Below are positions 2,389 to 55,313 of a DNA stretch of 64,000 bases, in pieces. The notes under the pieces are model-generated. The model saw only the letters and a program-made list of their open reading frames with translations. It was not told where the DNA came from and searched no databases. Location: IMG/VR virus record IMGVR_UViG_3300042868_007959, positions 1 through 64,000 of that record; one strand, 5' to 3'. The first letter of the stretch is position 1; each line of letters starts with the position of its first letter. A program made the position numbers and the translations under genes.

Positions 2389-2784
2389 TTATCTATTTCT
2401 CTCTCTTTCAGAAGTTATAGAGTTTTCTAAATCTTCCATTATTATATCATTTGTATCAATTACCATTTGATATGCTTCTAATGCGTCTACAATATGTTTA
2501 GATAATCTTTCAAAAGAAACATTAGTCATATTAGATCTATTAGATTTGTCCATTATCTTTTCTAGTTCATACATTGTTTCCTCCATCTCTTCATTTAAGT
2601 CTTTAATCGATCCTGTCAATTCGTATACATATTTAGTATAATTATATCCTGTCCCTTTAAACATACCACCGATACCCTTAATTGATGATATTAAACCTTC
2701 ATTAGTGTTTTCACTATTTTCTACTATTCTTTTTAATTCAGTATTAGAAAGTTCTATAACCTTACCATTTTTTTTGATTTTCAT
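2389..2784 (-). CDS. Coiled-coil hypothetical protein with leader (..LKRIVE)
   Basis: ORF track; TATTTAT at 2800-2807. Confidence 0.8.
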   Translation of the reverse strand: MKIKKNGKVIELSNTELKRIVENSENTNEGLISSIKGIGGMFKGTGYNYTKYVYELTGSIKDLNEEMEETMYELEKIMDKSNRSNMTNVSFERLSKHIVDALEAYQMVIDTNDIIMEDLENSITSERERNR

Positions 2785-3284: not shown

Positions 3285-3479
3285 ATGGAAAATAAAATAG
3301 TTAAATGTTGTAAAGAATGTCCTTGGGATATTAGGAATAAAAATAATGACTCAATAGTAGAACATTCTAAAAAATGGAAGAAGAAACATAATTGTCATAT
3401 GTTGATAAAAGGTAGGGAATACAAACTTTGGGATGATTTCCCAAAGTTCCAGTGTATAGGGAACAAATCTATTTTTTAG
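3285..3479 (+). CDS. Small Cys-rich hypothetical protein
   Basis: CCKEC..HNC..C; start at ATG 3285 right after the previous stop. Confidence 0.6.
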   Translation: MENKIVKCCKECPWDIRNKNNDSIVEHSKKWKKKHNCHMLIKGREYKLWDDFPKFQCIGNKSIF

Positions 3480-4170
3480 TATCTACTTGATCCAATTCTT
3501 TAATTTTTTCTATTAGTTTTGCATACGTATTTTTTTCAGTTATCCCATTAGGATTTAATCCATTCTCTTTTTGGAATTTTCGTATTGCATCCATAGTAAA
3601 TTTACCGTATTTAGAATCTACCCCATCTTTTTTTGGACCAAATTTACCGATAAAATAATCCATCTTAATTAACATAGTTTGTATTTCACCTACTAGGTTG
3701 TTATAACAACCTTTTCTAATGATACTACTACCTAATACGTCAGTTTCATCTGCGGCACAATCGATTGTAGATTGTGTTTGTTTTTTTATGGTTTTACCAC
3801 CACCCTCTAATCCGTAACAAACATTTTTTAAAAACAGACACACTTGTTCTTTATCTTTAGTCAGTTTTGTTTGAAATTCTCTAAGTTCTTCTATAATATC
3901 CTCAATAAATTCGTCGAGTACCACACTCTCCTCAACCTTCGATGAAGAAGAACAAAAATCTCCCTCTTTCACTACCTCTCTTTGGGTATCACCAAAAACA
4001 TATATAACTTCTGAAGCAGATGTTTCTGCAACACACTCATTTTTATAAACTAACGTGTCACCATTTTGGGTACTTTTCGCACAAACAGGATTCCATTCCC
4101 CACCACATTTATAGTAGTCTTCTTTAAGGATTAACTTATTAAACTGATTTTCAGTTATTTTAATTTTCAT
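3469..4170 (-). CDS. Leader + Kazal-like domain + peptidoglycan-binding domain (PG_binding_1)
   Basis: C-x7-C (CGGEWNPVC), YKNEC and GDFC; C-terminal EIQTML..DSKYGKFTMDAIRKFQKENGLNPNGI. Confidence 0.7.
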   Translation of the reverse strand: MKIKITENQFNKLILKEDYYKCGGEWNPVCAKSTQNGDTLVYKNECVAETSASEVIYVFGDTQREVVKEGDFCSSSSKVEESVVLDEFIEDIIEELREFQTKLTKDKEQVCLFLKNVCYGLEGGGKTIKKQTQSTIDCAADETDVLGSSIIRKGCYNNLVGEIQTMLIKMDYFIGKFGPKKDGVDSKYGKFTMDAIRKFQKENGLNPNGITEKNTYAKLIEKIKELDQVDTKK

Positions 4171-4171
4171 C

Positions 4172-4411
4172 TTAATATTTACCGTTTATATATATAAATA
4201 AGACTTCAGGTATTCTCACACACTGACTCATATTACCATTCGAATCATAACAACCAATAACCTCCAAACCCCTTACAATATTTTTAATGTCTCTAGGTGC
4301 CTTCATAGTAACATTTTCGACATATTGTTTATTGTATAATTTATTTGAATCATAAAATGATTCATTTATAATTTTTTTTAGTTGGGATTCTGATATAATA
4401 ATTTTTTTCAT
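4172..4411 (-). CDS. Small protein with leader MKKIIISESQLKKIINE
   Basis: Start moved to ATG 4411, just after the upstream stop. Confidence 0.8.
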   Translation of the reverse strand: MKKIIISESQLKKIINESFYDSNKLYNKQYVENVTMKAPRDIKNIVRGLEVIGCYDSNGNMSQCVRIPEVLFIYINGKY

Positions 4412-4412
4412 C

Positions 4413-5195
4413 TTAGTATGTTGCTTTATATCCATCACAATTTTTGATACACCAATCACCTAAAGCTTTAATTCTATTTTGTTCTTCAGTAGGTATACCT
4501 GTAGAAGGCATTTTATTAACATATCCAGTTGTAAATGTTTTACTACAAAGACTACAAGATAAATCTTTTCCACTTTCTTTTTTATTACCTCTTAAACAAA
4601 ACTCAAATCCTTTATAATCAGGATCTGTAACACTAAATATATATTTTTTAACACAGTCTTTTAAATTTTCACAATCAACTGTATCTATAATTTTTATGGG
4701 ATCGATAATATAATCATCTATATCATCTTGCCAATCTTTGTCATCTTGCCAATCTTTGTTATCTTGACAATTACAATCGGTACAAAATTTTGGTTTAGGT
4801 AATGATTTAGAGAATGACAATTTTTTACACATCATTTGCCAAGTATTAAACCCGACTTTACCGTCAGCAGTTAACCCAAATTTGTTTTGAAACTCTTCTA
4901 CTGCCCCTTTAGTTTGGTTTTTAAATACTCCATCACATTTCGTCCAGTCAGAATAACACCAATCACCACTCATACCACCACCACTGTACTTAGTATTAAA
5001 TTGGTTTACGTATAATAAATGCTGAATCATTTTAACAACGTCACCGTTTGATCCGTACATTGCCAACTTTCTTTTACATATTATTTCACATAAATCATCA
5101 CCTATTTGTATGATACCAGTGTAAGCCTCATTTAGAACACTTTTAACTATCTTACTTAATTGACTTTCAGTTAATTTAATTACTCTTTTTTTCAT
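4413..5195 (-). CDS. Leader + peptidoglycan-binding domain + Cys-rich C-terminus
   Basis: GSNGDVVKMIQHLL...DGVF..QTKGAVEEFQNKFGLTADGKVGFNTW. Confidence 0.75.
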   Translation of the reverse strand: MKKRVIKLTESQLSKIVKSVLNEAYTGIIQIGDDLCEIICKRKLAMYGSNGDVVKMIQHLLYVNQFNTKYSGGGMSGDWCYSDWTKCDGVFKNQTKGAVEEFQNKFGLTADGKVGFNTWQMMCKKLSFSKSLPKPKFCTDCNCQDNKDWQDDKDWQDDIDDYIIDPIKIIDTVDCENLKDCVKKYIFSVTDPDYKGFEFCLRGNKKESGKDLSCSLCSKTFTTGYVNKMPSTGIPTEEQNRIKALGDWCIKNCDGYKATY

Positions 5196-5197
5196 TA

Positions 5198-5482
5198 TTA
5201 ATAATATATATCTTCATTATTTTCTTCACCATAATTTCCACCGAAAGATTCTGTTTGTATCCAGTCATTAAATAGATTTGCGTATTCTTCATCAGACATC
5301 TCATCGACAACCCCACCTAACCAGTTTTCAAATTCCTCAACTCTGGATGGGGTAAGATCTCCCCAACCAAACTTAAATTTCATTATATGTAAAACGTTAT
5401 CAATATCTATTGTAGATTCTCCCAATAATTTTCGATTTGCCTCTAAAATAACTTGTCTTTTAATTTTTAACAGTCTGCTCAT
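5198..5482 (-). CDS. Hypothetical protein with leader (..RKLLGE)
   Basis: ORF track; TATTTAT at 5495-5502. Confidence 0.75.
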   Translation of the reverse strand: MSRLLKIKRQVILEANRKLLGESTIDIDNVLHIMKFKFGWGDLTPSRVEEFENWLGGVVDEMSDEEYANLFNDWIQTESFGGNYGEENNEDIYY

Positions 5483-7216: not shown

Positions 7217-7822
7217 TTAATTATTATATTTTAGTGTGAAAAAATCTCTACCATTTAAATATATTTCATGGTGATCCAATAAAGATCCATCACTTATCAG
7301 TCGTTCATAATCTTTTGTGGGTACGATAGACATTTTACTATTGTAAATTAAAATATTTTCTTTAAATCCATCTTCTATAAAATATTCAAATTCTGATATT
7401 TTTTCGAATTCACTTTCATATGTTTCTTGATCGTCACCAGTGATAATTGCGAAATTAAAGTTTTTATCGCTTAAAGGTAATGTTTCCTTTATAACATCCT
7501 TTCTTTTATACATTTTTTCCCAAACATTAAAGGCATCACCCCTAATATCTCCATCTCTAGAAATCATCAACCCATTAGGGTGGCAAAACATTAAAGCCAC
7601 TTCTAATACTGTAGGACCAAATCCTTTTTCTGCCGCAATCATTGGAAAATAATAGGTACCATCTTTATTTCTAGATAATCCTACAAATCCTAAAATTTCA
7701 CCGTTAACAAAGTCATACAATGATATATTCATATCATCATATATGGAAATTATAATATTTCTAGGTAGAGATGACATTTTTTTGTATTCTTCTTTTAATA
7801 TTCTCCGTATTATTTCTTTCAT
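7217..7822 (-). CDS. Leader + putative GNAT-fold protein
   Basis: IAAEKGFGPTVLEVAL (acetyl-CoA-loop-like), DAFNVWEK; leader MKEIIRRILKE. Confidence 0.45.
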   Translation of the reverse strand: MKEIIRRILKEEYKKMSSLPRNIIISIYDDMNISLYDFVNGEILGFVGLSRNKDGTYYFPMIAAEKGFGPTVLEVALMFCHPNGLMISRDGDIRGDAFNVWEKMYKRKDVIKETLPLSDKNFNFAIITGDDQETYESEFEKISEFEYFIEDGFKENILIYNSKMSIVPTKDYERLISDGSLLDHHEIYLNGRDFFTLKYNN

Positions 7823-10475: not shown

Positions 10476-11084
10476 TTAATATCTTGTATTATTAGTGACA
10501 AAATCACCTAAGAATAATCTATAGTTATCCCATAATATTTTAAGATTTTTACCCTCAATATTAAACATATCGGAACAATAACTAACGAATTTTGGTGGTG
10601 GGGTTTCTAGGTTTAATAAATATAGGATATCTATATTCTCATTACTACTATATCTTAACGAAATACTATTGACAAAAAAAGGTACCTTTAATACTGAAGA
10701 GTTAACTTGATAGGTATCATCTTCAAGAATATTTAATATCTTATCTAAATACGTAACCATTCTATCATCCGATTCGTTAATAGTTTTTTTATTATAAACA
10801 ATATCTATTAAAAAATCTTTATATTTTTCCCATACATAATCGATTTGATTATCATCTTCTAACACATAATTATCATATAGATAATCTACTAATCCCAGTG
10901 GTATAGAATTATATCGTAAAATCCCTTTCATATTTGCTTCAGTAAATGCTCTATGGTTACTCCAAGGTAACTTAAAAAATAATAAGAATGTCGTATCGGC
11001 AAGAGATTGAGATTCTTGAAATTTCGTGTTGGTAATTAAATCATTAATGATATAATTTAAATATTTTTCTATTCTACTGTTCAT
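10476..11084 (-). CDS. Two-module polyprotein (INE|S)
   Basis: YLNYIINDLITNT...INESDDRMVTYLDKILNILEDDT. Confidence 0.75.
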   Translation of the reverse strand: MNSRIEKYLNYIINDLITNTKFQESQSLADTTFLLFFKLPWSNHRAFTEANMKGILRYNSIPLGLVDYLYDNYVLEDDNQIDYVWEKYKDFLIDIVYNKKTINESDDRMVTYLDKILNILEDDTYQVNSSVLKVPFFVNSISLRYSSNENIDILYLLNLETPPPKFVSYCSDMFNIEGKNLKILWDNYRLFLGDFVTNNTRY

Positions 11085-11754
11085 TTATAAAAATTTCTCC
11101 CATCTTATTCATTAATAAAACCGTTGATCCTAAACCAAAACTTGTTACTATCGAAGGATTTTTATTTGTGTACTCCCTAAATATTTCCAACATCTCTTTA
11201 AGGATATAGTCCATATATGTGTCACAAAATTTCTCAAATGACTCTACAGTACCATCATTTTCTAAGTATAGTCCATATGAATTTTTAAAATCATGTATTT
11301 TTACCACATACATATCACTTCTATCCTCGAATTGTTCATATGTCATACTTTCTAAAAGACTGTCAACAGTTTGATATATAATTTTAATTAATTTTTGTTT
11401 TAGATCCTCACTAAAACCGTCAAATTTTAAAAAATCTGATGGGTTACCCATCATCCATTGGTGATGTGAGGTAATATTTTCAGTAATAGTTTCTATATTA
11501 CCACCATATCTTCTATCTTTTAATTTTGAGACATATCTATCCCATACATATCTAACCTCTGATCGGGCAACCCCATAATTATCTTCAATATATTCCACAA
11601 ATAAAATGTAAGGTGTTCCTTGATTCTTTAAAAAATATTCCCAACCCACAACACCAAATGGTGAGATAAGTTTTAAAGGGAGATCACTAATTTTACTATC
11701 GTCTACTAAAAAATCAACAATTCTATTCAAATATTGTATGTTTCTAACACTCAT
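11074..11754 (-). CDS. Module-family protein (YLNRIVDFLVDD) plus a second segment after ITE|N
   Basis: Start moved to ATG 11754; TATTTAT at 11767-11774. Confidence 0.75.
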   Translation of the reverse strand: MSVRNIQYLNRIVDFLVDDSKISDLPLKLISPFGVVGWEYFLKNQGTPYILFVEYIEDNYGVARSEVRYVWDRYVSKLKDRRYGGNIETITENITSHHQWMMGNPSDFLKFDGFSEDLKQKLIKIIYQTVDSLLESMTYEQFEDRSDMYVVKIHDFKNSYGLYLENDGTVESFEKFCDTYMDYILKEMLEIFREYTNKNPSIVTSFGLGSTVLLMNKMGEIFINEQ

Positions 11755-11816
11755 ATATGTTTTTAAATAAATATCGTATAAAAACAAAAATATAAATGTA
11801 GATACGAATAGATTTA

Positions 11817-18570: not shown

Positions 18571-20169
18571 TTATTTTATTTTTATTTTCATTTTAGTTCC
18601 TATTTCATTTTTCTCACAAGTAATTTTAAACTTGTGTTCTTCCAAAATTGCAACGCAAATATTTAATCCCAAACCAGTACCTGATTCCTTTTGTCCTTCT
18701 TTTCTTGTATATGGTTTACATAGGTAATCAAAATCTTCTTGTGTTAACCCCCTACCATTATCTTGAATGTAAACAGTATTCTCATCAGAATATATTTTAA
18801 CAAACTTAGTGTCAGAATCATTGTACTTTAAACCATTCCTGATTAAGTTGTCAACTGCAGTACAGAATAACGCTTCGTTTACTTCTATTGTTGGTAAGTC
18901 CTCAATAATTACTTGACTACTATATGCGGTTGATGATAGGTAATCAGATAGTATCACTTTTAAATCGCATTCCGCCTTATTTAAAACAACATCTTTTTTA
19001 ACAAGATTTGTAAACTCATATACCCCTTTATACACTTTTTGTGAATGTTTAAGACCTTCCTTAATCATTCTAATTGGTGCCTCTATTTTTAAATCGGTAA
19101 TGTCTTCGGGTTTTAATCTTCTTTCTAAAGAACTTAATCCTCTTGGCATATATGTATTGATACCTGAGTGCATATCGTGTCTTAATATTTTAGCGGCATG
19201 TTCTAAATAAGTGTTCTTTTTTTCAATCTCTTTCTTTTGTTCGTGAGTAGTGGTGACATCTGTTGCAATTTTCATAACACGATAAATCTTACCATCCATA
19301 CCAATGATTGGATTATAGGTTGCTTGAAGATGTATTAAGGAACCATCCTTTTTAACTCTAGTGATTTCACCAGTAAATAATATACCATCATTTAATTTTT
19401 CCCAAAAAAGAGAATATTCCTCACTTTTTGAGTGGTCCTCATCTATAAAAATCCTATGGTGTTTCCCAACCACTTCATCCAGTGATGAATATCCCATAGT
19501 ATTTAAAAACAATTCATTAGCGAAAATTATATTCCCCTTCAAATCAAACTCAATAACAGCGTTGGATTTATTTATCGCGTTCATTCTATTACGAATTTCC
19601 ACTTCTTTTTTCTTAAGATCTGTAACATCTTGTCTAATTGATGAGAATCCCTCCAACTTACCGTGTTTGTCAAATTTTGCCTTGATGTAGGTATCGACAT
19701 AATATAGTTCACCTGATTTTCCTTTGTTGGTAACAACATCATTCCATATCTCACCTTTCATTACTTTTTCATACATTTTACCCCAATATCCATCAGGTTG
19801 TAATCCTGAGTTTACAATAACATGATCCTTACCTTTAACCTCATCTAAAGACCAACCTGAAACATCCTCAAACTTTTTATTAACGTATGTAATTTTACCG
19901 TATTTATCGGCAACAGAAACGATGGTTGCAGAATCAATAAAATCTTCACTATCTTTTATTTGTTTTAATAAACCATCTTTTAACTCTACGGTTTGGGATT
20001 TCATTAAAAAATAAAATAATGGAGAAAATAATAAAAAGCAAGATATCTCAATAATTTTTGTTATATCAGTGGATCCAATAATCCCCGATAAAACAAAAAT
20101 TTTAGTTAAAAGAAAAGTAACCATCAAGATTACAGAAGGTATTATTAATAATTTACGTTTTTTAATCAT
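18571..20169 (-). CDS. Membrane PAS-PAS sensor histidine kinase
   Basis: Two N-terminal TMs, two PAS/PAC domains, H-box LRHD, N-box NLIRNGLKY, DNGRG, GTGLGL. Confidence 0.93.
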   Translation of the reverse strand: MIKKRKLLIIPSVILMVTFLLTKIFVLSGIIGSTDITKIIEISCFLLFSPLFYFLMKSQTVELKDGLLKQIKDSEDFIDSATIVSVADKYGKITYVNKKFEDVSGWSLDEVKGKDHVIVNSGLQPDGYWGKMYEKVMKGEIWNDVVTNKGKSGELYYVDTYIKAKFDKHGKLEGFSSIRQDVTDLKKKEVEIRNRMNAINKSNAVIEFDLKGNIIFANELFLNTMGYSSLDEVVGKHHRIFIDEDHSKSEEYSLFWEKLNDGILFTGEITRVKKDGSLIHLQATYNPIIGMDGKIYRVMKIATDVTTTHEQKKEIEKKNTYLEHAAKILRHDMHSGINTYMPRGLSSLERRLKPEDITDLKIEAPIRMIKEGLKHSQKVYKGVYEFTNLVKKDVVLNKAECDLKVILSDYLSSTAYSSQVIIEDLPTIEVNEALFCTAVDNLIRNGLKYNDSDTKFVKIYSDENTVYIQDNGRGLTQEDFDYLCKPYTRKEGQKESGTGLGLNICVAILEEHKFKITCEKNEIGTKMKIKIK

Positions 20170-26046: not shown

Positions 26047-27120
26047 CTAAAATAATCCACTATTTTTTATATAATGATGCCACACATATTGTATTTCTTC
26101 TATATGTAACCCATACATATTTTCACAATATATAGAAAACGCCCTGAAGGAATGTACTGGAAGATGTTGTTGTTTGTTAGGAGTAAGTAGGAGTATATTA
26201 CTAAAGTATGGATATTTAATTTCTCTCTCTTCATAATCTATAATAGTATCATCTATTATATACTGTACAATTTTATCTAAGTATATTTTTTTACTGTCTA
26301 CAGATTCATTCATTGGTTTGGAATTTATCTTATGATTAAATATAACTTTATATTGATCCCATACATATACTGATTCCTCATATGTTAATCCATATGTATC
26401 ATTACAATATTCAGAGAACGCATTAAATAATGGAGATTCAATTGTTGCGTAATATAATGGTGTTGATAAACCCCATTGGGAATTAATATAAGGAAGAAAA
26501 GGATATGTTACTAACTTTTGTTCATAGTCTAGTTCTGTATCATCGATTATATACTGTGATATATTGTCTAGATATTTTTCTTTTCTCTCTACAGATTCAT
26601 TAATAGATCCTTTATCGTCAACAATAGATTTATATTTTTCCCACACATATATAATTTCTTCACCTGTCAATCCATATATATCTTTACAATATTTAAGAAA
26701 AGAATAGTAGTAAGGAGAAGGTATTATAAAGGGTGGAATAATAGGAATGGGATTATATAGATATGGTAGTTTACATAGATTCTTATTGTAATCTATCTCT
26801 GTATCATCTATTATATACTGTACAATCTTATCTAGATATATTTCTTTATTGTCTACGGATTCATTGATAGATCCAGGAAGTTTAATCTTTCTATTAATTT
26901 GAAATAAAAGATTACCATAGACATATAAACAATCATCACTGTTTAAACCATAGTCAAACTCTAATATATCCCATACCGTACTGAAGAATCCATTTGAAAG
27001 AAACTCTACATCATAGGTTCTATTAGATCCATCTAATATCTCTACTGTAGAATGAAGATAATTTATTTTAATATCCTCTAACAAATACTCCACTATCTTA
27101 TTTAAATGTGTTTTATCCAT
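26047..27120 (-). CDS. Four-module polyprotein (INE|SV, MNE|SV)
   Basis: Three junctions, each followed by YLD(K/N)I.QYIIDDT. Confidence 0.85.
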   Translation of the reverse strand: MDKTHLNKIVEYLLEDIKINYLHSTVEILDGSNRTYDVEFLSNGFFSTVWDILEFDYGLNSDDCLYVYGNLLFQINRKIKLPGSINESVDNKEIYLDKIVQYIIDDTEIDYNKNLCKLPYLYNPIPIIPPFIIPSPYYYSFLKYCKDIYGLTGEEIIYVWEKYKSIVDDKGSINESVERKEKYLDNISQYIIDDTELDYEQKLVTYPFLPYINSQWGLSTPLYYATIESPLFNAFSEYCNDTYGLTYEESVYVWDQYKVIFNHKINSKPMNESVDSKKIYLDKIVQYIIDDTIIDYEEREIKYPYFSNILLLTPNKQQHLPVHSFRAFSIYCENMYGLHIEEIQYVWHHYIKNSGLF

Positions 27121-34165: not shown

Positions 34166-35101
34166 TTATGTTGGTAATTTTTTCCCTTTGTGATGAGTTT
34201 TCTCACTCTCTATTCTTATCTTTATTTTTGGTGAATAACCTTTAGGTAATTTATTATTGATACCCTCAAATTCCCCCATTTCATTATCCATTCTTATAAC
34301 AATTTGTTTTTCTTTTATGTTCATCATAATTTGTCCAACAGTATGCATATTATACATATTTTTAGTCCTATATGGATTTAAGAATGGATCGTCATCATAT
34401 TTTTGTTTTAATGTATTAATTACATCCATATCTGTTTTGGCATCTTTTAAATGTTTTTTCGCCAATTCCATTCTAGATACAGATGATTTTCTTTTTTCAC
34501 CTGTAGTGTAACCCGCATCTTTTTGGTATACACCATGATTTGATCTAACAACTATTTTAGAATCCTCTTTTAATTTTTTAATTATTGGTGCATGTTTAGA
34601 TGTCATTTCAATAACATAAATATCTTTACCATCTGATACAAATGTCTCACCTCTTAAACCCCATTTACTTTTTGTTCCAGTAAACTCAATTAATGACTTT
34701 ACTGCGGATCTCATATCTTTTTTTGTGAGAGCTTCTCTTATTTTTTGCCCATCTTTTGAGTATACCCTCTTTTCAGTTTTATCGTTTTTAGTTTTTCTTT
34801 GTTTGAGTACTTTTTCACCTTCTTTTTCATCGGAAGCAGTTGATAATGCAGAATTTACTATACTGATTCCATACTCATTCATTCCCTCACTCCAATCAGT
34901 ATCAACATCCCTCCAATAGGCAATTTCAACACCGTCAACTATTTCGTGAACCAATTCAATTTTCGCCTTATAACCTCTATCCCTATTTTTTGCTAAAACA
35001 ATGGTATCTTTTAATTTAACTCCTGCAATTACACATTCATTTAATACTCTTGGTTCCGTTTCTTCGAGTAATATTCTTCTTATATTGTTTTGTAAATTCA
35101 T
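34166..35101 (-). CDS. Leader + N-terminal-nucleophile (Ntn) hydrolase, Cys23 after VLNE
   Basis: CVIAG..VLAKNRD, SEGMNEYGISIVNSAL, VRSNH are typical of Cys-Ntn hydrolases. Confidence 0.8.
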   Translation of the reverse strand: MNLQNNIRRILLEETEPRVLNECVIAGVKLKDTIVLAKNRDRGYKAKIELVHEIVDGVEIAYWRDVDTDWSEGMNEYGISIVNSALSTASDEKEGEKVLKQRKTKNDKTEKRVYSKDGQKIREALTKKDMRSAVKSLIEFTGTKSKWGLRGETFVSDGKDIYVIEMTSKHAPIIKKLKEDSKIVVRSNHGVYQKDAGYTTGEKRKSSVSRMELAKKHLKDAKTDMDVINTLKQKYDDDPFLNPYRTKNMYNMHTVGQIMMNIKEKQIVIRMDNEMGEFEGINNKLPKGYSPKIKIRIESEKTHHKGKKLPT

Positions 35102-39255: not shown

Positions 39256-39786
39256 TTATCTTTTACTGATGATATCCTTAAGTTTTTCTAATGAAACTTT
39301 TAATATCTCACCTTGTTCTCTTGGTCTTAATTGACTCATTTGTTTTGCAGTTGATATCGAATACCTACTATCATTTTCGAACCACTGCCCATCTTTAAAA
39401 ACAAAAATAGGGTACCAATTATATGAATATACTACGTATGACCTATTTTCATATTGGGAATGGGTATTACTACCTTTAAATGGTACCTTAGCCATAACTA
39501 AATCTCTACCTGTTTTATTACTAGTAGCAACTCTTTTTTTAGTTATATCAGTTCTCACCAACTCATCGTACTCATCTTTGAAGTAATTGTCTTTAAATAA
39601 CTGATAAAGTTCAAATGCGTCTACACCTGAAAACCCGAAGTTTTTATTAATAAAAGCAATAACCTTACTGTATGGGGTATCTACTCCAAACCCCTCAGAT
39701 TTTAATGTCTTGATAATATATTTTTCTAATTTTTCTTTTCTATTATCAACCTCTTCTTTTAATATTTTTTTGATAGTATTTTTCAT
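39256..39786 (-). CDS. Hypothetical protein with leader MKNTIKKILKE
   Basis: ORF track; TATTTATA at 39790-39798. Confidence 0.8.
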   Translation of the reverse strand: MKNTIKKILKEEVDNRKEKLEKYIIKTLKSEGFGVDTPYSKVIAFINKNFGFSGVDAFELYQLFKDNYFKDEYDELVRTDITKKRVATSNKTGRDLVMAKVPFKGSNTHSQYENRSYVVYSYNWYPIFVFKDGQWFENDSRYSISTAKQMSQLRPREQGEILKVSLEKLKDIISKR

Positions 39787-41077: not shown

Positions 41078-43072
41078 TTAATTAATTATTTTTCTAATTG
41101 TCCCGTCATCGTAAATTTCTAACAATAAACCTTTAGTTTGTTGATCAACTTCCTGACCTAATAAATTTATATATTTAACAATTTTTTTATCTTTGATTTG
41201 TTTAGATACACTTATTGGTCCATATATTTTAAATTGCCCATCTATATCATATTGGTTTAATCTATAATAAGTTAACTCATTTAAGTTATAATCAATAAAA
41301 GAATATTTTATTTCTGTGTTACTATTATATGCTGCTTCTTTAATTGAGATGGTTTCCCAAAAAACCCCATCTAAACTCATTTCCAAATCAAAGTAACTAG
41401 AATTATGTTCAGATGCAGTTGCCCACTTTATCACATTATATTGTTGGTATGGGTACCCCTCAAATTCAATTAGTTCTACAGGTAATGATATAGGGTTAGA
41501 TATTCTTATAGTATACTCCTCAATTTCACCATATCCATACCCAGTTGAGTAGTAGGCATCCACGTTTGGAGTTGAATTCCAAACTGAAAGGACTCTCATA
41601 AGGACATCTCCTGTTGTCGCATCTAAGGGGATTGTTATTGATTGTGATGTTGAATTTGCAGTTGGTTTTAACAAAACATTCTCAGATGTCTGAAACGTAC
41701 CGTCACCATTCCAATCAATCCAAGCACCATAACCTTGACCTGGTGGTACTGTATTTGACGCAGTAACAGATAAATTATAAGGTTCACCTTTTGTGACATT
41801 CCCAATAATTGAGGTGAAATCAGAATAAGCATCACCATCATTAGTAGTTGTGTTATTAATGTCACTAATAGTCACATTAGTAATATGATCACCATCAGCA
41901 ATTCCTGATGAATATGGAGGTGCACTTTTTAATGTTATATTTACAATATTTGACACACCAGAAGGGCAAGTACCGTCTTTAGATGTTGTTCTAACATAAA
42001 CGTTTGGTTGTTGTATATTTAATTGGATGTTAAAGGGGTTAGTTGGGGTAACGAATGTATTACTAACCGTACCAAAATTATTGTAAGAGAATTCAATTTT
42101 TGTAATTGTTCCACCATTACCTGTAGTAGTTAAAGAAACGGCATCATTCACTGTTGTTAAAATTTTATCTGAACTTAATGTTCCTCCATTTGTCGGAGTC
42201 GTACAAACTGTTACTGATGTTACTGTTGCCTGAAACCCAGACCTAATACCTAAACCATCTGAAGTAAATCTTAAAGTTAGTTGACCTAAAGAGTTTTCCG
42301 CAGTAATGCTTGTCGGTAATGATGTACCATTTAATGTGGTCAATAAAGTAGAACTTGTATTTGGTCCGTCATAGACATACAGATAATCCCAACCTGACTC
42401 TAGATTAAATGATGAAAAATTTAATTGTAATTTTTTTGTATTATCTGATGGTGTTAAAGTTACTGTTTGGTCTAAACTATTGGCGTAATTATCTGTTGTC
42501 CCACCCCTATCTGTTATGGTATATGTTAATGTGGATGTTAGAGTTTGACTACAATTTGACTCAAAAGGGATAATAGTATTAGAATTACTATTCGAAGACG
42601 TAACACCAAAATCATCTAAATACCATACATTCATTCCTGACGCTCTCGTATCCCTTATTCGAATATAGACATTTACTAAATTTAAAATAGTTAAATCAAT
42701 TGTCCTTTTATTATATGTTGCGGTAGGATTGGCGGAATATGTATTACGAGTTGTCCAGTTTGTATTATCAGTAGATGTTTCCACTACAAAATTGTGTGTC
42801 GCGGAAGTACCACTTCTTCTTATCCAAAAAGTCACTACTGACGGATTTGATATTATGGGTGTCCTTATGAAATCTCCTTGACCATTAAATGATAAATTAT
42901 TATTACCAGTTCTTACTGATGCCGTACTATATCCTATTGATGATTGATCCCAAGTTCCTCCCTGAGTTGGTAATGATCCATTAAAACTTTCATAAATTAA
43001 ATATTGACTACATTGTGTGATACCCAAAAAAGAAATTAGGGTAAATAGTGAGATTAATATTATTCTTTTCAT
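41078..43072 (-). CDS. Secreted surface protein: signal peptide + CUB + GEVED + LPVEL Ig-like + T9SS-CTD-like tail
   Basis: LESGWDYLYVYDGP (CUB); AWIDWNGDGTF..GEIEEY (GEVED); LPVELIEF..YYRLNQYDIDG; NLLGQEV..IYDDGTIRKII. Confidence 0.8.
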   Translation of the reverse strand: MKRIILISLFTLISFLGITQCSQYLIYESFNGSLPTQGGTWDQSSIGYSTASVRTGNNNLSFNGQGDFIRTPIISNPSVVTFWIRRSGTSATHNFVVETSTDNTNWTTRNTYSANPTATYNKRTIDLTILNLVNVYIRIRDTRASGMNVWYLDDFGVTSSNSNSNTIIPFESNCSQTLTSTLTYTITDRGGTTDNYANSLDQTVTLTPSDNTKKLQLNFSSFNLESGWDYLYVYDGPNTSSTLLTTLNGTSLPTSITAENSLGQLTLRFTSDGLGIRSGFQATVTSVTVCTTPTNGGTLSSDKILTTVNDAVSLTTTGNGGTITKIEFSYNNFGTVSNTFVTPTNPFNIQLNIQQPNVYVRTTSKDGTCPSGVSNIVNITLKSAPPYSSGIADGDHITNVTISDINNTTTNDGDAYSDFTSIIGNVTKGEPYNLSVTASNTVPPGQGYGAWIDWNGDGTFQTSENVLLKPTANSTSQSITIPLDATTGDVLMRVLSVWNSTPNVDAYYSTGYGYGEIEEYTIRISNPISLPVELIEFEGYPYQQYNVIKWATASEHNSSYFDLEMSLDGVFWETISIKEAAYNSNTEIKYSFIDYNLNELTYYRLNQYDIDGQFKIYGPISVSKQIKDKKIVKYINLLGQEVDQQTKGLLLEIYDDGTIRKIIN

Positions 43073-49838: not shown

Positions 49839-49883
49839 CATTTTAATCTTTTTTTTTAATATTTATTGTATATTATTATTTAT

Positions 49884-51698
49884 ATGAGAAAATTAAACAG
49901 AGCAGAAATAAGATTTCTTAAATATTTAGATGAACATTTAGACGATGTGTTTGATAAAACGTCAGCACTTAAAGTGTTAAGAGATGATTTAGGTTTAGAT
50001 TCAAAAGAGGCGGCACACTTATATAGTGTTTGGTACTTCACCAAAGGAGATACAGATTATAGTGAGGTAGACTACGATGATGATAATAGTTTAGTATCTT
50101 TTATAAGGAAAATGAGTTCTTTTAATAGTAATTCTGATAGAGAATCTTATATAGATATGTTATATGAAGATGAACTTGAGAAATTAGAGAGAATTTATGG
50201 TGAATGGATTAATATTCGTTGTGGTGGTTGGAGAAGTACTTTACCATGTATCGTATGGGATAGTGATGGTATCACATTAGAATTAGATTATGATGATTGG
50301 AAAGAACATTTTTCAGGATTACATGAACAAAGTTTCTATATCTATGATAAAGCGTATAGTGATTATGGTAGTGATTATGACGAAATGGATGATTCAGAGT
50401 TTGATTACGCTTATAGTAATGATGAAACTATAGAACTTTTTGAAGAATTAGCGTTAATCGTAGGTAAAAATACTTGGCCTGGTAAAGATAATGGAGAGAT
50501 ATCGGAAAAAGATATATCTAATTTTTTAGAAAGTATTTTACCATCAGATGTATATGAATCGATAGTTAGTGATTATGTAACTGAACTAGGATATGTGGTT
50601 ACAAATGCTAGAAATAAATCAACAAGAGAAACTTACTCGAATGAAATAAAATATGACGTTAACAAATCCAGTTGTAGTACAAGTAATAATTGTATCGAAA
50701 TACCATATGATGATTTAATCGAAATAATTAATGAAAATGGTTTAGTAAATTTATCTGAATTAAAAGACGCTGAAATACAACCAGACATTGATCTAGAAAA
50801 TGGTTATTACGATTCTTGGGTAGATGATGATGGGGTTGATGAGGTAATAACTGAATTTAACAGAACATTAAGACGATCCATAGATTCAATTATAGAAGAT
50901 GGTGGAATAGATATTAATGAATTAATAGAAAAAAGAGAGGGTTTTTATAAATTTATTAAAGATTTAGGTTTTGTTTTAATAAACTCAACAAATAAGGGTG
51001 ATTGGTATAAAAGTAAGGATGATAAAATACATTTTTATATGAACGATGTAGATTTTGGGGAAGATAAGATTAAATTTACATATGAAGGTAAATCACATTT
51101 AGTTCCGATAGAAGATTTAAGTGATTGGTCACAAGGTAGTGTATTAGATTTAAATGAAAGTGTTAGATATAACAAGATTAAATTACTGAAAGAGAATAAA
51201 GAAATAATTAATAAAATATCGATATTCGATTTTGATGGTACACTTATGGAGACACCTCATCCAGAGAAGGGTAAGTTATTTTGGGAAGAAACTACAGGTA
51301 TGAAATATCCTCATATTGGGTGGTGGAGTAAACCTGAATCTTTAGATACTAAAGTATTTAACATTAGGACTATAACCCCAACTGTTAAAGCGTATAAGAA
51401 AGAAATGGGGGATCCTAATACATTAGTCATTATGTTAACAGGTAGGTTACCACAACAACACGATCAAGTGGAAGGTTTATTGTCCTCAAACGGGATTTAC
51501 TTTGACGAGTACCATTATAAAGGTAACGGTGATACTTTAGGTAGTAAAATAAATACTATTAGAACATTATTAAGTAAATACCCAACAGTTGAGTCCATTG
51601 AGATGTGGGAGGATAGAGAACCTCACGCAATTGAGTTTGAGAAATGGGGTGAAGAAAATGGTGTAACTATAAAAGTTAATTTAGTATTAAAGAAGTAA
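49884..51698 (+). CDS. Acidic N-terminal region fused via LNE|SV..LLKE to a HAD-family phosphatase
   Basis: FDFDGTL, MLTGR, MWEDR; similar to RNA-repair HAD domains. Confidence 0.8.
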   Translation: MRKLNRAEIRFLKYLDEHLDDVFDKTSALKVLRDDLGLDSKEAAHLYSVWYFTKGDTDYSEVDYDDDNSLVSFIRKMSSFNSNSDRESYIDMLYEDELEKLERIYGEWINIRCGGWRSTLPCIVWDSDGITLELDYDDWKEHFSGLHEQSFYIYDKAYSDYGSDYDEMDDSEFDYAYSNDETIELFEELALIVGKNTWPGKDNGEISEKDISNFLESILPSDVYESIVSDYVTELGYVVTNARNKSTRETYSNEIKYDVNKSSCSTSNNCIEIPYDDLIEIINENGLVNLSELKDAEIQPDIDLENGYYDSWVDDDGVDEVITEFNRTLRRSIDSIIEDGGIDINELIEKREGFYKFIKDLGFVLINSTNKGDWYKSKDDKIHFYMNDVDFGEDKIKFTYEGKSHLVPIEDLSDWSQGSVLDLNESVRYNKIKLLKENKEIINKISIFDFDGTLMETPHPEKGKLFWEETTGMKYPHIGWWSKPESLDTKVFNIRTITPTVKAYKKEMGDPNTLVIMLTGRLPQQHDQVEGLLSSNGIYFDEYHYKGNGDTLGSKINTIRTLLSKYPTVESIEMWEDREPHAIEFEKWGEENGVTIKVNLVLKK

Positions 51699-54926: not shown

Positions 54927-55313
54927 TTATCTCTTTTTACGACCTTGACAATGTGCCCTTTGTGAAAACCCTTTTGGGTTATTACAGTCAATAGACTTTT
55001 TATATTTTTGTGACCACTTTTCTTCTAACATATCTGAAGACTTTTTTTCACCTTCTAATTTATTCATAAAGAAATCAAATACTTGATCAATATTAACCTT
55101 TGCTTCAGTTACATGATCATCTGCCCAATCATGACCATTGTTTAAAATGTCATTTACTTTATTCGGATCAAATTCTTTAATCATAATATCTAATTGTCTT
55201 CTCATTTGAGTTAGGTTACTGAAAAACATATAGTTTTCACCTTTAGATTCTTCATTTAAAGTTTCTCTTACTATTCTATAAAGATCCTTTTCTGTCAATG
55301 TTACTTTTTTCAT
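54927..55313 (-). CDS. Leader protein with a basic Cys-containing C-terminal peptide after LEE
   Basis: MKKVTLTEKDLYRIVRETLNE; MLEE|KWSQKYKKSIDCNNPKGFSQRAHCQGRKKR. Confidence 0.8.
   Translation of the reverse strand: MKKVTLTEKDLYRIVRETLNEESKGENYMFFSNLTQMRRQLDIMIKEFDPNKVNDILNNGHDWADDHVTEAKVNIDQVFDFFMNKLEGEKKSSDMLEEKWSQKYKKSIDCNNPKGFSQRAHCQGRKKR

What the first reader, a model, noticed from the sequence alone, without database searches (positions are those of the whole stretch)
3469..4170. Leader + atypical two-disulfide Kazal domain + peptidoglycan-binding domain
Seen: C-GGEWNPV-C has the Kazal Cys2-x7-Cys3 spacing, followed by NEC (Cys4) and GDFC (Cys6). Cys1 and Cys5 are both missing, so the loss is pairwise; the predicted P1-P1' is Gly-Glu. 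Established: Kazal domains inhibit serine proteases, and two-disulfide atypical Kazals exist. Inference: a wall-anchored protease inhibitor delivered to the periplasm, possibly protecting ejected proteins.
Basis: partly seen in the sequence, partly recalled or inferred. Interest (0 to 1): 0.6.

Follow-up and report, generated by a model that had tools for sequence, protein, structure and literature searches.

The report
Phage Kazal inhibitor with wall-binding domain
A large T4-like phage from lake water encodes a protein joining a divergent two-disulfide Kazal protease-inhibitor domain to a peptidoglycan-binding domain, behind a short N-terminal tag that about 19 proteins of the phage share and that may be a capsid-loading signal; no such inhibitor domain turned up in the isolated-phage records searched.

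Summary
Window 3469-4170 (minus strand) is a 233-aa ORF with 18 metagenomic homologue clusters and eight invariant cysteines.

- **Kazal domain (residues 22-73).** Pfam's Kazal models and PROSITE miss it. A profile of the domain found 47 outside proteins in 1.84 billion, and 35 of them are Pfam Kazal_1. Profile-profile comparison gave 98% probability. The AlphaFold model (pLDDT 83.5) matches almost only Kazal inhibitors. The best match is the two-disulfide silk inhibitor GmSPI-2.
- **Wall-binding domain.** Residues 158-219 are PG_binding_1 (E 6e-12).
- **The "leader".** It is not a secretion signal. It is a 17-residue motif shared by about 19 ORFs of this 254-kb phage. These include an M23 peptidase and a second wall-binding protein. 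Fifteen of 18 copies checked carry two [LIVM]-x-E sites, the form of the T4 gp21 cleavage motif. The phage has a gp21-family protease and a gp23-type capsid protein.

Best reading, inferred and not shown: a capsid-loaded, ejected, wall-tethered inhibitor of a host serine protease. Inhibition, packaging and the target are untested. I rate it a new variant of a known kind, of moderate interest.

The parts
3469..4170 (-). Complete ORF, 233 aa plus stop (protein P0001).
   Evidence: It has 18 homologue clusters of about 230 aa, all with PF01471. RNA-library contigs from two lakes lie on 3542-3802, 3843-4103 and 3904-4098; DNA carry-over is not excluded.
4120..4170 (-). N-terminal motif, residues 1-17 (MKIKITENQFNKLILKE). 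It contains ITE-7 and LKE-17 and is the candidate capsid-targeting propeptide.
   Evidence: It is the most conserved segment of the protein (mean column entropy 0.36 bits). A motif profile (A6) hits 19 places in the genome and 12 in a sister contig. [LIVM]-x-E sites are paired in 15 of 18 copies. There is no hydrophobic core, so it is not a Sec leader.
3952..4107 (-). Two-disulfide (four-Cys) Kazal-type domain, residues 22-73: Cys22, Cys30, Cys46, Cys73.
   Evidence: sequence; fold. By homology with GmSPI-2 the disulfides should be C22-C46 and C30-C73. This pairing is inferred; I had no access to model coordinates.
4084..4104 (-). Predicted reactive-site loop, residues 23-29 (P2 Gly23, P1 Gly24, P1' Glu25, P2' Trp26, P3' Asn27, Pro28, Val29).
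   Evidence: Aligned with the CTTEWDPVC loop of GmSPI-2. P2, P1, P1' and P3' are the most variable columns of the domain (1.6-2.0 bits), between invariant C22, W26, P28 and C30.
3700..3951 (-). Middle region, residues 74-157: an acidic helical stretch and four invariant cysteines (111, 118, 138, 155). Fold unassigned.
   Evidence: Low pLDDT over residues 80-130. Conservation. The atlas search gave no lead.
3514..3699 (-). PG_binding_1 domain, residues 158-219.
   Evidence: Pfam E 5.8e-12. PHROGs endolysin cell-wall-binding regions match. tblastn hits to phage lysins cover only this part. Foldseek finds the phiKZ gp144 PG-binding domain.
4172..4411 (-). Adjacent upstream motif-bearing gene (MKKIIISESQLKKIINE...), about 80 aa from the ATG at 4411.
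   Evidence: Its orthologue precedes the Kazal gene in the related contig L004.
4413..5195 (-). Second motif-bearing gene, 260 aa, with PG_binding_1 and a Cys-rich C-terminal part. It is a cassette absent from the related contig L004.
   Evidence: Chimeric junction inside the motif-coding sequence.
2389..2784 (-). Motif-like gene, 131 aa (MKIKKNGKVIELSNTELKRIVENSE...), in the same cluster.
   Evidence: 26 bits.

Best explanation
SHOWN: this is a conserved gene of a 254-kb freshwater phage with a T4-type head module. Its protein has three parts. (1) A 17-residue N-terminal motif that about 19 otherwise unrelated ORFs of the phage share, nearly always ending in [LIV]-x-E. (2) A divergent Kazal-type domain of the four-Cys, two-disulfide class. 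(3) A PG_binding_1 domain.

INFERRED: the motif works like the T4 capsid-targeting sequence. It docks the protein to the prohead core and is removed by the phage's gp21-family protease after Glu17, and perhaps also after Glu7. The mature protein then travels in the head and is ejected at infection. The disulfides form outside the reducing cytoplasm. The C-terminal domain tethers the protein to the host's peptidoglycan. The exposed Cys22-Cys30 loop then blocks a host envelope or secreted serine protease of the subtilisin or chymotrypsin type by the canonical substrate-like mechanism. This would shield the co-delivered phage proteins, such as the motif-tagged M23 peptidase.
For: Kazal identity:
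- A profile of residues 16-80 (A2) ranks Kazal inhibitors as the top four of 177,635 PDB sequences: CrSPI-1 E 0.029, GmSPI-2 E 0.032, a second CrSPI-1 entry, and Greglin.
- In 1.84 billion proteins the profile finds 47 non-family hits at E<=1e-3. Of these, 35 are Pfam Kazal_1 and 34 are Kazal_2.
- hhalign against 32 such repeats gives 98.3% probability.
- The domain model has pLDDT 83.5 with a beta-hairpin, helix and strand.
- With VIA-align, 20 of the 22 chains at Z>=2 among 48,161 are Kazal, follistatin or FIM domains. The top is GmSPI-2: Z 4.2, rmsd 2.4 A, 40 of 40 residues aligned. Foldseek and the ESM atlas agree.

Inhibitor competence:
- GmSPI-2 has two disulfides and the same C-x-x-E-W-x-P-V-C loop, and it strongly inhibits subtilisin and proteinase K (PMC4169406).
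- The loop-supporting Asn44 is invariant and Tyr42 alternates only with Phe, while P2, P1, P1' and P3' are the most variable columns.

Wall binding: PG_binding_1 at E 6e-12.

Tag and head machinery:
- Motif family. Paired [LIVM]-x-E sites occur in 15 of 18 copies against 19% of other ORFs.
- Peptidase_S77 protease and Gp23 capsid protein are present.
- The predicted capsid-protein maturation site LLNE-60 resembles the motif ends LINE, IINE and VLNE.
- T4 gp21 cleaves after Glu, for example at ITE-6 and LTE-619 in Alt. The T4 targeting sequence is the only conserved part of otherwise diverse internal proteins (PMC5694885, PMC9026906, PMC3012670).
- Tagged proteins include wall-directed enzymes: Peptidase_M23 and Phage_lysozyme2 in a relative. 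Two tagged genes lie between the tail sheath and tail tube genes.
- The tag-coding sequence is a crossover point for cassette gain or loss.

No secretion signal is present, and the frame extends only 5 codons upstream of the start.
Against: - No experiment or proteome shows packaging, cleavage or inhibition.
- Pfam Kazal_1 and Kazal_2 do not match, even at E<=10 in a one-genome search.
- All structural matches are individually weak (Foldseek E>0.3, Z<=4.2) because the domain is small.
- The hhalign partner set was drawn from the profile's own hits, so that result is partly circular.
- P1 is Gly, Ser, Asn, Asp or Glu across the family. From my own knowledge of the OMTKY3 P1 series, these are poor P1 residues for most serine proteases.
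- T4 internal proteins enter the cytoplasm with the DNA, not the periplasm.
- The motif copies are paralogous, so the shared [LIV]-x-E could be inherited and need not be selected independently.
- The motif is absent from the nearest cultured relative by capsid protein, Flavobacterium phage immuto.
- The host is unknown.
Confidence: 0.4

Rival explanations
1. The Kazal-like domain does not inhibit proteases. It is a small disulfide-stabilised structural or binding module, like the Kazal-like domains of follistatin, SPARC or complement factor I. The protein would then be a wall-binding accessory with some other partner.
For: P1 is Gly in half of the family and otherwise Ser, Asn, Asp or Glu. Follistatin-, FSTL1-, BM-40- and factor-I-type non-inhibitory domains are also among the structural matches. 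The Pfam inhibitor models do not match. The phage itself encodes no S8 or trypsin-like protease as an obvious partner.
Against: The closest matches by both sequence and structure are active inhibitors: GmSPI-2, CrSPI-1, infestin, rhodniin, LDTI and Greglin. The loop scaffold (C-x7-C, Trp at P2', Pro-Val, Asn-x-Cys4) is invariant and Tyr42 changes only to Phe, while the contact positions vary. That is the pattern known for canonical inhibitors. OMTKY3 variants with Gly, Ser, Asp, Glu or Asn at P1 still form crystallised complexes with SGPB (titles listed).
Confidence: 0.27
2. The protein is not carried in the virion. It is made late, stays in the cytoplasm, and reaches the wall or the medium only at lysis. 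There it binds wall debris and neutralises host extracellular proteases that would damage progeny virions. The shared N-terminal motif would then serve another purpose, such as a recombination or translation-initiation cassette boundary or a docking helix for a non-capsid partner.
For: Canonical endolysins with PG_binding_1 also lack signal peptides and reach the wall through holin lesions (PHROGs endolysin matches). The motif-coding DNA is demonstrably a crossover site. There is no direct evidence of packaging. T4 internal proteins go to the cytoplasm.
Against: The motif is conserved at the amino-acid level with varied codons, and it is the most constrained part of the protein. It nearly always ends in the cleavage-type [LIV]-x-E. 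It tags wall-active enzymes of the kind typically found in virions, and two tagged genes sit inside the tail gene block.
Confidence: 0.25
3. The domain regulates the phage's own prohead protease inside the capsid, for example by limiting over-digestion of cargo.
For: The protein would sit beside the S77 protease if it is packaged. Some family members have Asp or Glu at P1, and gp21-type enzymes cleave after Glu.
Against: Most members have Gly, Ser or Asn at P1. To my knowledge Kazal inhibitors are known only against chymotrypsin- and subtilisin-fold enzymes, not the assemblin fold. A wall-binding domain has no role inside a capsid. The disulfides would not form in the cytoplasm where proheads mature.
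Confidence: 0.04
4. Chance cysteine pattern or a non-coding ORF.
For: None beyond the failure of the Pfam and PROSITE Kazal signatures.
Against: There are 18 homologue clusters with invariant cysteines and domain-wise conservation. There are also library-wide significant profile hits to Kazal proteins and a confident fold.
Confidence: 0.01

Closest known systems
[quoted passage not shown]
   Same: Four cysteines and two disulfides. Seven-residue reactive loop with the same C-x-x-E-W-x-P-V-C sequence. Beta-hairpin, helix and strand fold. Best structural match (Z 4.2, rmsd 2.4 A, 40 of 40 residues aligned, 28% identity) and a top sequence match.
   Different: These are animal secreted single- or two-domain inhibitors with Thr at P1 and proven subtilisin and proteinase K inhibition. 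The phage domain has Gly at P1. It has five extra residues between Cys3 and Cys4 and a longer segment before the last Cys. It is fused to a wall-binding domain, and its activity is untested.
Tandem four-Cys Kazal repeat proteins of bacteria and protists (Pfam Kazal_1/Kazal_2; e.g. P0021 from the diatom Thalassiosira profunda, metagenomic P0022-P0040; bacterial Kazal clusters of the ESM atlas)
   Same: The same C-x7-C-x10-15-C-xn-C pattern without Cys1 and Cys5, and the same P-V-C, Y/F-x-N-x-C-x-A motifs. hhalign probability 98.3%.
   Different: These are arrays of 2-13 repeats, and some carry PKD domains or T9SS sorting tails. The phage protein has a single domain with a different architecture. 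No close cellular relative was found in one genome each of 185,579 species by pattern scan.
T4 internal proteins IPI, IPII, IPIII and Alt, with their capsid-targeting sequence
   Same: A short N-terminal peptide is shared by otherwise unrelated, fast-evolving proteins and ends in a hydrophobic-x-Glu site. The phage has gp21-, gp22- and gp23-type head genes in T4 order. The tag is linked to cassette-like gene turnover (PMC9026906, PMC5694885, PMC3012670).
   Different: The T4 sequence is 10 residues (6 in Alt), with no demonstrable sequence similarity to this 17-27-residue motif. T4 cargo acts in the cytoplasm on restriction systems and RNA polymerase, whereas here several cargoes are wall-directed. 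Packaging and cleavage are proven in T4 and only inferred here.
Phage wall-binding modules of the PG_binding_1 type (e.g. the phiKZ gp144 N-terminal domain, PDB 3bkh)
   Same: The same Pfam family and a Foldseek match at 35% identity over 78 columns.
   Different: In those proteins the module is joined to a catalytic lysin domain. Here it is joined to an inhibitor-type domain, with no recognisable hydrolase.
Kazal-like proteins of Pandoravirus (BFVD A0A2U7UBD3, A0A2U7U867)
   Same: The only named viral Kazal-like proteins near the model in BFVD.
   Different: These are giant viruses of amoebae, and the match is weak (E 0.58). No phage protein with this fold is named there, and tblastn of the domain finds nothing in 50,697 phage records even at E<=10.

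Membership tests
Kazal-type inhibitor domain (Pfam PF00050/PF07648; MEROPS I1) | Match to the curated Pfam Kazal_1 or Kazal_2 model above the gathering score | tested here: not met
   No hit at E<=10 on the protein or in six-frame one-genome searches. The PROSITE PS00282 pattern is absent in all 19 sequences.
Kazal-type inhibitor domain (Pfam PF00050/PF07648; MEROPS I1) | Profile-level homology to proteins that Pfam certifies as Kazal | tested here: met
   Of 47 non-family hits at E<=1e-3 in 1.84 billion proteins, 35 are Kazal_1. hhalign gives 98.3% probability and E 1.6e-14, though the partner set came from those hits. In an independent PDB search the top four sequences are Kazal, E 0.03-0.46.
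Kazal-type inhibitor domain (Pfam PF00050/PF07648; MEROPS I1) | Cys2-x7-Cys3 reactive loop, Tyr-x-Asn-x-Cys4 and a C-terminal Cys6 | tested here: met
   C22-x7-C30, Y42-K-N44-E-C46 and C73. The cysteines and N44 are invariant in 18 homologue clusters; Tyr42 alternates only with Phe.
Kazal-type inhibitor domain (Pfam PF00050/PF07648; MEROPS I1) | Six cysteines and three disulfides (classical form) | tested here: not met
   Cys1 and Cys5 are absent. The same holds in the accepted non-classical members GmSPI-2 and CrSPI-1-D1 and in most profile hits.
Kazal-type inhibitor domain (Pfam PF00050/PF07648; MEROPS I1) | Fold of a beta-hairpin, central alpha-helix and third strand | tested here: met
   AF2 pLDDT 83.5 with strands 29-33 and 39-42, helix 45-50 and strand 53-58. 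PDB and atlas neighbours are almost exclusively Kazal, though each match is weak by itself.
Kazal-type inhibitor domain (Pfam PF00050/PF07648; MEROPS I1) | Tight canonical inhibition of a serine protease | not testable with these tools
   This needs enzymology. The docking attempt gave no verdict.
PG_binding_1 (PF01471) | Match to the curated model above the gathering score | tested here: met
   46.1 bits against a cut-off of 23, E 5.8e-12, residues 158-219.
PG_binding_1 (PF01471) | Binding to peptidoglycan | not testable with these tools
   This needs a pull-down with purified sacculi.
T4-type capsid-targeting sequence / internal (ejected) head proteins | A short N-terminal peptide shared by otherwise unrelated proteins of one phage | tested here: met
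   19 hits in the genome and 12 in the sister contig. The proteins behind the tag include PG_binding_1, Peptidase_M23 and many without a family.
T4-type capsid-targeting sequence / internal (ejected) head proteins | The peptide ends at a prohead-protease site (hydrophobic-x-Glu), and the phage encodes a gp21-family protease | tested here: met
   [LIVM]-x-E at positions 16-27 in 16 of 18 copies, and two such sites in 15 of 18 copies, against 19% of other ORFs. Peptidase_S77 at 82 bits and a PHROG head maturation protease match at E 2e-39.
T4-type capsid-targeting sequence / internal (ejected) head proteins | Presence in the virion with the peptide removed; ejection into the host | not testable with these tools
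   There is no cultured phage and no proteome. This needs virion mass spectrometry.
Sec/Tat/lipoprotein signal peptide | N-terminal hydrophobic core of about 10 or more residues followed by a cleavage site | tested here: not met
   Residues 1-21 are MKIKITENQFNKLILKEDYYK. The longest uncharged stretch is 3 residues, and only 5 codons lie upstream before a stop.

The most novel reading that the evidence does not exclude
This lake jumbo phage may use a 17-27-residue, protease-removable N-terminal tag to load about 19 diverse cargo proteins into its capsid and eject them into the host envelope. The cargo would include wall hydrolases, wall-binding proteins and this Kazal protein. The Kazal protein would then be the first phage-delivered, peptidoglycan-anchored anti-protease effector. 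The tag would be a second, independent capsid-targeting system that also drives cassette exchange of cargo genes.
Probability: 0.3. Interest if true: 0.75.

Novelty: new variant of a known kind. Interest (0 to 1): 0.55.

Why it matters
Known phage-encoded protease inhibitors, such as T4 PinA against Lon and lambda CIII against FtsH (cited from my own knowledge), act in the cytoplasm. A canonical disulfide-bonded inhibitor fused to a wall anchor would point to host envelope or secreted serine proteases as a barrier to infection that phages actively disarm.

The shared N-terminal tag matters separately. If it is a capsid-targeting signal, it defines the ejected proteome of an uncultured, widespread lake phage from sequence alone. 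It would also offer a second natural peptide for loading foreign proteins into capsids.

The result also shows that a divergent Kazal domain missed by Pfam can be recovered by family-profile and fold evidence.

Tried and rejected
- **Pfam and PROSITE Kazal signatures.** The Pfam Kazal models found nothing on the protein or on the genome. PROSITE PS00282 found nothing either. I took this as divergence, not absence, given the other evidence.
- **Complex prediction.** The Kazal domain with mature subtilisin Carlsberg gave no verdict (score 0.00, controls not run). This is no evidence either way.
- **ESM atlas feature search.** Searches for the middle region (residues 76-160) and for the neighbour's Cys-rich C-terminus gave nothing usable.
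- **Genome-contig scans.** The A5 alignment was too diverse to search with. With A2, no relative was found.
- **Viral and phage collections.** The viral-contig scan found only a sister contig with a 100% identical domain. tblastn of the domain against phage records found nothing at E<=10.
- **A phage-encoded target.** A search for S8 or trypsin-like proteases in the phage genome found none.
- **Host clue.** A search for a T9SS sorting domain found none. The host remains unknown.
- **Promoter box.** A TATATTTATA-like box lies upstream of 73 of 303 genes, including head genes and this gene. It is too common in a 71% A+T genome to indicate timing.
- **Read joint.** The joint 4422->5171 in run X18 rests on a 24-28-base side and does not give an in-frame fusion, so I dismissed it. 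The cassette difference is supported instead by the contig comparison.
- **PHROGs.** It only re-found the wall-binding and M23 domains.

No other genetic code was used.
Full report
**The gene and its genome.** Window 3469-4170 on the minus strand is a 233-aa ORF (P0001). The frame extends only 5 codons upstream of the ATG before a stop, so no N-terminal extension is hidden. The window is the first 64 kb of a single 253,879-bp virus contig with 29% G+C, estimated about 78% complete.

The genome has a T4-type head module in T4 order. It comprises two small ORFs, a Peptidase_S77 (gp21-family) maturation protease at 252079-252768, an acidic 435-aa scaffold-like ORF, and a Gp23-type major capsid protein at 248884-250641. 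A tail tube gene lies at 193076-193564. An ORF at 198074-200923 looks sheath-like by its N-terminal sequence. The capsid protein is closest to those of Flavobacterium phage immuto, Microcystis phage Mel-JY01, uncultured huge phages and Rhodothermus phage RM378, at 35-43% identity.

The stretch 3300-5300 occurs in lake and freshwater metagenomes of more than 20 studies. Short contigs from two RNA libraries lie on the gene (3542-3802, 3843-4103, 3904-4098). DNA carry-over in those libraries cannot be excluded. The host is unknown. The cultured relatives named above all infect diderm bacteria.

**The observation.** The word-index protein search found 18 homologue clusters of 57-98% identity. All are about 230 aa long, all carry PF01471, and all come from metagenomes. 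In their alignment the four cysteines, W26, P28, N44, Y57 and G70 are invariant, and Tyr42 changes only to Phe. Four further cysteines at 111, 118, 138 and 155 are also invariant.

**Is it a Kazal domain?** The curated signatures fail. Pfam gives no Kazal hit at E<=10 on the protein. Kazal_1 and Kazal_2 find nothing in a six-frame search of the genome. The PROSITE pattern is absent. The likely reasons are the missing Cys5 and a Cys3-Cys4 spacing of 15 residues where the classical form has 10.

Family-level evidence supports the Kazal call:
- A profile of residues 16-80 (A2) searched against all PDB sequences ranks CrSPI-1, GmSPI-2, CrSPI-1 domain 1 and Greglin as its four best hits out of 177,635 sequences, at E 0.03-0.46.
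- The same profile searched against 1.84 billion representative proteins gives 49 hits at E<=1e-3. Two are family members.
- Of the other 47, Pfam Kazal_1 and 34 Kazal_2.
- Most of the 47 are tandem arrays of the same four-Cys unit, C-x7-C-x10-15-C-xn-C.
- One hit (P0024, a MucBP repeat protein) has no cysteines in the matched repeats and is spurious.
- Profile-profile comparison of A2 with 32 of these repeats gives 98.3% probability. The partner set came from A2's own hits, so I count this as supportive and not independent.

Structure agrees. The domain model built on a 53-row alignment has mean pLDDT 83.5 and pTM 0.67, with a beta-hairpin, a helix and a third strand. The whole-protein model showed the same elements at pLDDT of about 80. 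Foldseek finds nothing below E 1e-3, as expected for about 50 residues. Even so, nearly all of its top rows are Kazal inhibitors: GmSPI-2 at rmsd 2.1 A over 38 columns and LDTI at rmsd 1.6 A over 39 columns. An exhaustive alignment to 48,161 PDB representatives gives only 22 chains at Z>=2, and 20 of them are Kazal, follistatin or factor-I-module domains. GmSPI-2 leads with Z 4.2, rmsd 2.4 A, 40 of 40 residues aligned and 28% identity. The nearest ESM-atlas clusters are bacterial Kazal_1/Kazal_2 families.

GmSPI-2 is a 36-residue inhibitor with four cysteines and two disulfides. Its P1 is Thr, two residues after the first Cys. It is highly active against subtilisin and proteinase K, and CrSPI-1 domain 1 also has only two disulfides (PMC4169406). 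Its loop CTTEWDPVC aligns residue for residue with CGGEWNPVC.

I conclude that residues 22-73 are a divergent member of the Kazal superfamily, in the two-disulfide class. That class is common outside animals, so the pairwise loss of Cys1 and Cys5 is a class trait.

**Is it an inhibitor?** This is not shown. Three points favour it. The nearest relatives by sequence and shape are active inhibitors. The residues that hold the loop (Trp26, Pro28, Val29, Tyr42 and Asn44; Tyr42 alternates with Phe and Val29 once with Ile) are conserved. And P2, P1, P1' and P3' are the most variable columns of the domain, at 1.6-2.0 bits against 0.63 for residues 28-46. From my own knowledge, that is the pattern described for the contact residues of canonical inhibitors.

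One point counts against it. P1 is Gly in 9 homologues, Ser in 3, Asp in 3, Asn in 2 and Glu in 1. From my own knowledge of the ovomucoid P1 series, these are weak P1 residues for most enzymes, although complexes of such variants have been crystallised (titles). The phage encodes no S8 or trypsin-like protease and no second Kazal domain. A target would therefore be a host enzyme.

**The C-terminus.** Residues 158-219 match PG_binding_1 at 46 bits, E 5.8e-12. tblastn and PHROGs hits to phage lysins cover only this part. No catalytic domain is recognisable. Residues 74-157, with four invariant cysteines, remain unassigned.

**The 'leader'.** Residues 1-17, MKIKITENQFNKLILKE, have no hydrophobic core, so this is not a secretion signal. 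It is the most conserved part of the protein, with mean entropy 0.36 bits against 0.58 for the wall-binding domain. The same motif, of the form MK-(I/K)-I-(I/V)-(I/L)-(T/S)-E-x-(Q/D)-(F/L/Y)-x-(K/R)-(L/I)-(I/V)..., opens at least 13 ORFs found by pattern. A profile built from it hits 19 places in this genome and 12 in a sister contig. It hits none in Flavobacterium phage immuto.

The proteins behind the motif are unrelated to each other. They include:
- this protein;
- a 260-aa neighbour with PG_binding_1 and a Cys-rich tail;
- a 751-aa Peptidase_M23 protein;
- a Phage_lysozyme2 protein in a related contig;
- many small proteins without a family.

Two of the tagged genes lie between the tail sheath and tail tube genes.

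Fifteen of 18 copies carry two [LIVM]-x-E sites, one at positions 7-14 and one at positions 16-27. Only 19% of other ORFs have two such sites in their first 30 residues. In this protein the sites are ITE-7 and LKE-17.

T4's gp21 protease cleaves after Glu at such sites, for example ITE-6 and LTE-619 in Alt. The T4 internal proteins are targeted to the prohead core by a short N-terminal capsid-targeting sequence that gp21 then removes. That sequence is the only conserved part of an otherwise diverse and fast-changing set of ejected proteins (PMC5694885, PMC9026906, PMC3012670). By alignment with mature T4 gp23, this phage's capsid protein should be cut near residue 53-60. The site LLNE-60|S lies there and resembles the motif ends LINE|S, IINE|S and VLNE|A.

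The motif-coding DNA also acts as a crossover point. A related contig lacks the 260-aa and 94-aa genes. Its 81-aa gene begins with the first codons of the window's 260-aa gene and switches inside the T-E-S-Q-L codons to the body of the window's 87-aa gene.

Together these observations make a capsid-targeting, protease-removed propeptide the best reading of the 'leader'. It remains an inference. The copies are paralogous, so their shared features are not independent, and no proteome exists.

**Mechanism proposed.** Shown: the domain identities, the tag family and the T4-type head protease. Inferred: the protein is loaded into the prohead by the tag, trimmed after Glu17, carried in the virion and oxidised outside the cell. 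It is then ejected at infection, tethered to peptidoglycan by the C-terminal domain, and blocks a host serine protease through the Cys22-Cys30 loop. This would protect co-ejected proteins such as the tagged M23 peptidase.

I give the full chain 0.4. The main rivals are a non-inhibitory Kazal-like module (0.27) and a protein released only at lysis, with the tag serving another purpose (0.25). Regulation of the phage's own protease is unlikely (0.04).

**Novelty.** Kazal domains and PG_binding_1 are well known, and bacterial four-Cys Kazal proteins are numerous. This context appears to be undescribed: a phage gene, a single Kazal domain fused to a wall anchor, behind a shared tag.
- tblastn of the domain finds nothing in 50,697 phage records, even at E<=10.
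- IMG/VR holds only a sister contig.
- The only named viral Kazal-like proteins near the model are from Pandoravirus.
- Full-text searches found no paper on a phage Kazal inhibitor.

I rate it a new variant of a known kind, with interest 0.55. The tag family may prove the more valuable lead.

**Limits.** The complex prediction with subtilisin gave no verdict and is not used as evidence. I could not read model coordinates, so the disulfide pairing is inferred by homology. All work used table 11 and referenced sequences only.

Noticed in passing
window 4172-5482 compared with L004:7150-7450: A related lake-phage contig lacks the 260-aa PG_binding gene (4413-5195) and the 94-aa gene (5198-5482). 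Its 81-aa gene is a chimera: the first codons of the window's 260-aa gene are joined, inside the T-E-S-Q-L codons of the shared motif, to the body of the window's 87-aa gene. So the motif-coding sequence is a recombination point for cassette gain or loss.
   Followed up: partly
genome G000:C1:111654-113909 (outside the window), with 113906-114817 upstream: A 751-aa protein with the same N-terminal motif and a C-terminal Peptidase_M23 domain (E 2e-33). The adjacent 303-aa ORF has a weaker copy of the motif.
   Followed up: partly
L004:15464-16137 (related contig): A Phage_lysozyme2 (PF18013) protein that opens with the same motif (MRIIITENQLKRVILNE). At least 8 other ORFs in that 16-kb stretch also carry it.
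   Followed up: no
window 26047-27120, 11074-11787; 7217-7822, 34166-35101, 39256-39786; many ORFs in L004: There are two further families of ORFs with shared N-terminal motifs. One has the form ...(F/Y)L(D/N)K(I/V)V(D/E)xL.... The other has the form ...I(K/R)(K/R)IL(K/L)EE.... The phage group appears to be built from several multigene families that share N-termini.
   Followed up: no
window 18571-20169 (-): A 532-aa PAS-domain histidine kinase (PAS E 2e-17, HATPase_c E 2e-14) encoded by the phage.
   Followed up: no
window 41078-43072 (-): A 664-aa protein with a signal-peptide-like N-terminus and CUB and GEVED domains. No T9SS sorting tail was found anywhere in the genome.
   Followed up: partly
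window 49866-51698 (+) and 59744-61699 (-): A 610-aa protein with a HAD_SAK_1 domain (RNA-repair 'Swiss army knife' type), and a 651-aa PcfJ-like protein.
   Followed up: no
window 54927-55313 (-): A motif-bearing 128-aa protein with a weak, sub-threshold match to Tox-REase-5 (E 0.007, 17 bits against a cut-off of 25). This could be a tagged nuclease-like cargo or a chance match.
   Followed up: no
whole genome; e.g. upstream of 252768, 251981, 24116, 2784, 5482, 4170: A TATATTTATA-like box (at most 1 mismatch) lies 11-70 nt upstream of 73 of 303 ORFs, about twice as often in gene sense as in antisense. Head protease and scaffold genes are among them. It may be a promoter element, but it is not discriminating in a 71% A+T genome.
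   Followed up: partly
window 3542-4103: Contigs from two lake metatranscriptome libraries lie on the gene (0-2 differences from the window). This hints at transcription in nature, but DNA carry-over is not excluded.
   Followed up: partly
genome G000:C1:197122-198021 (outside the window): Two motif-bearing genes (196 aa, and a Cys-rich 94 aa) sit directly downstream of the sheath-like gene and upstream of a 998-aa ORF and the tail tube gene.
   Followed up: no
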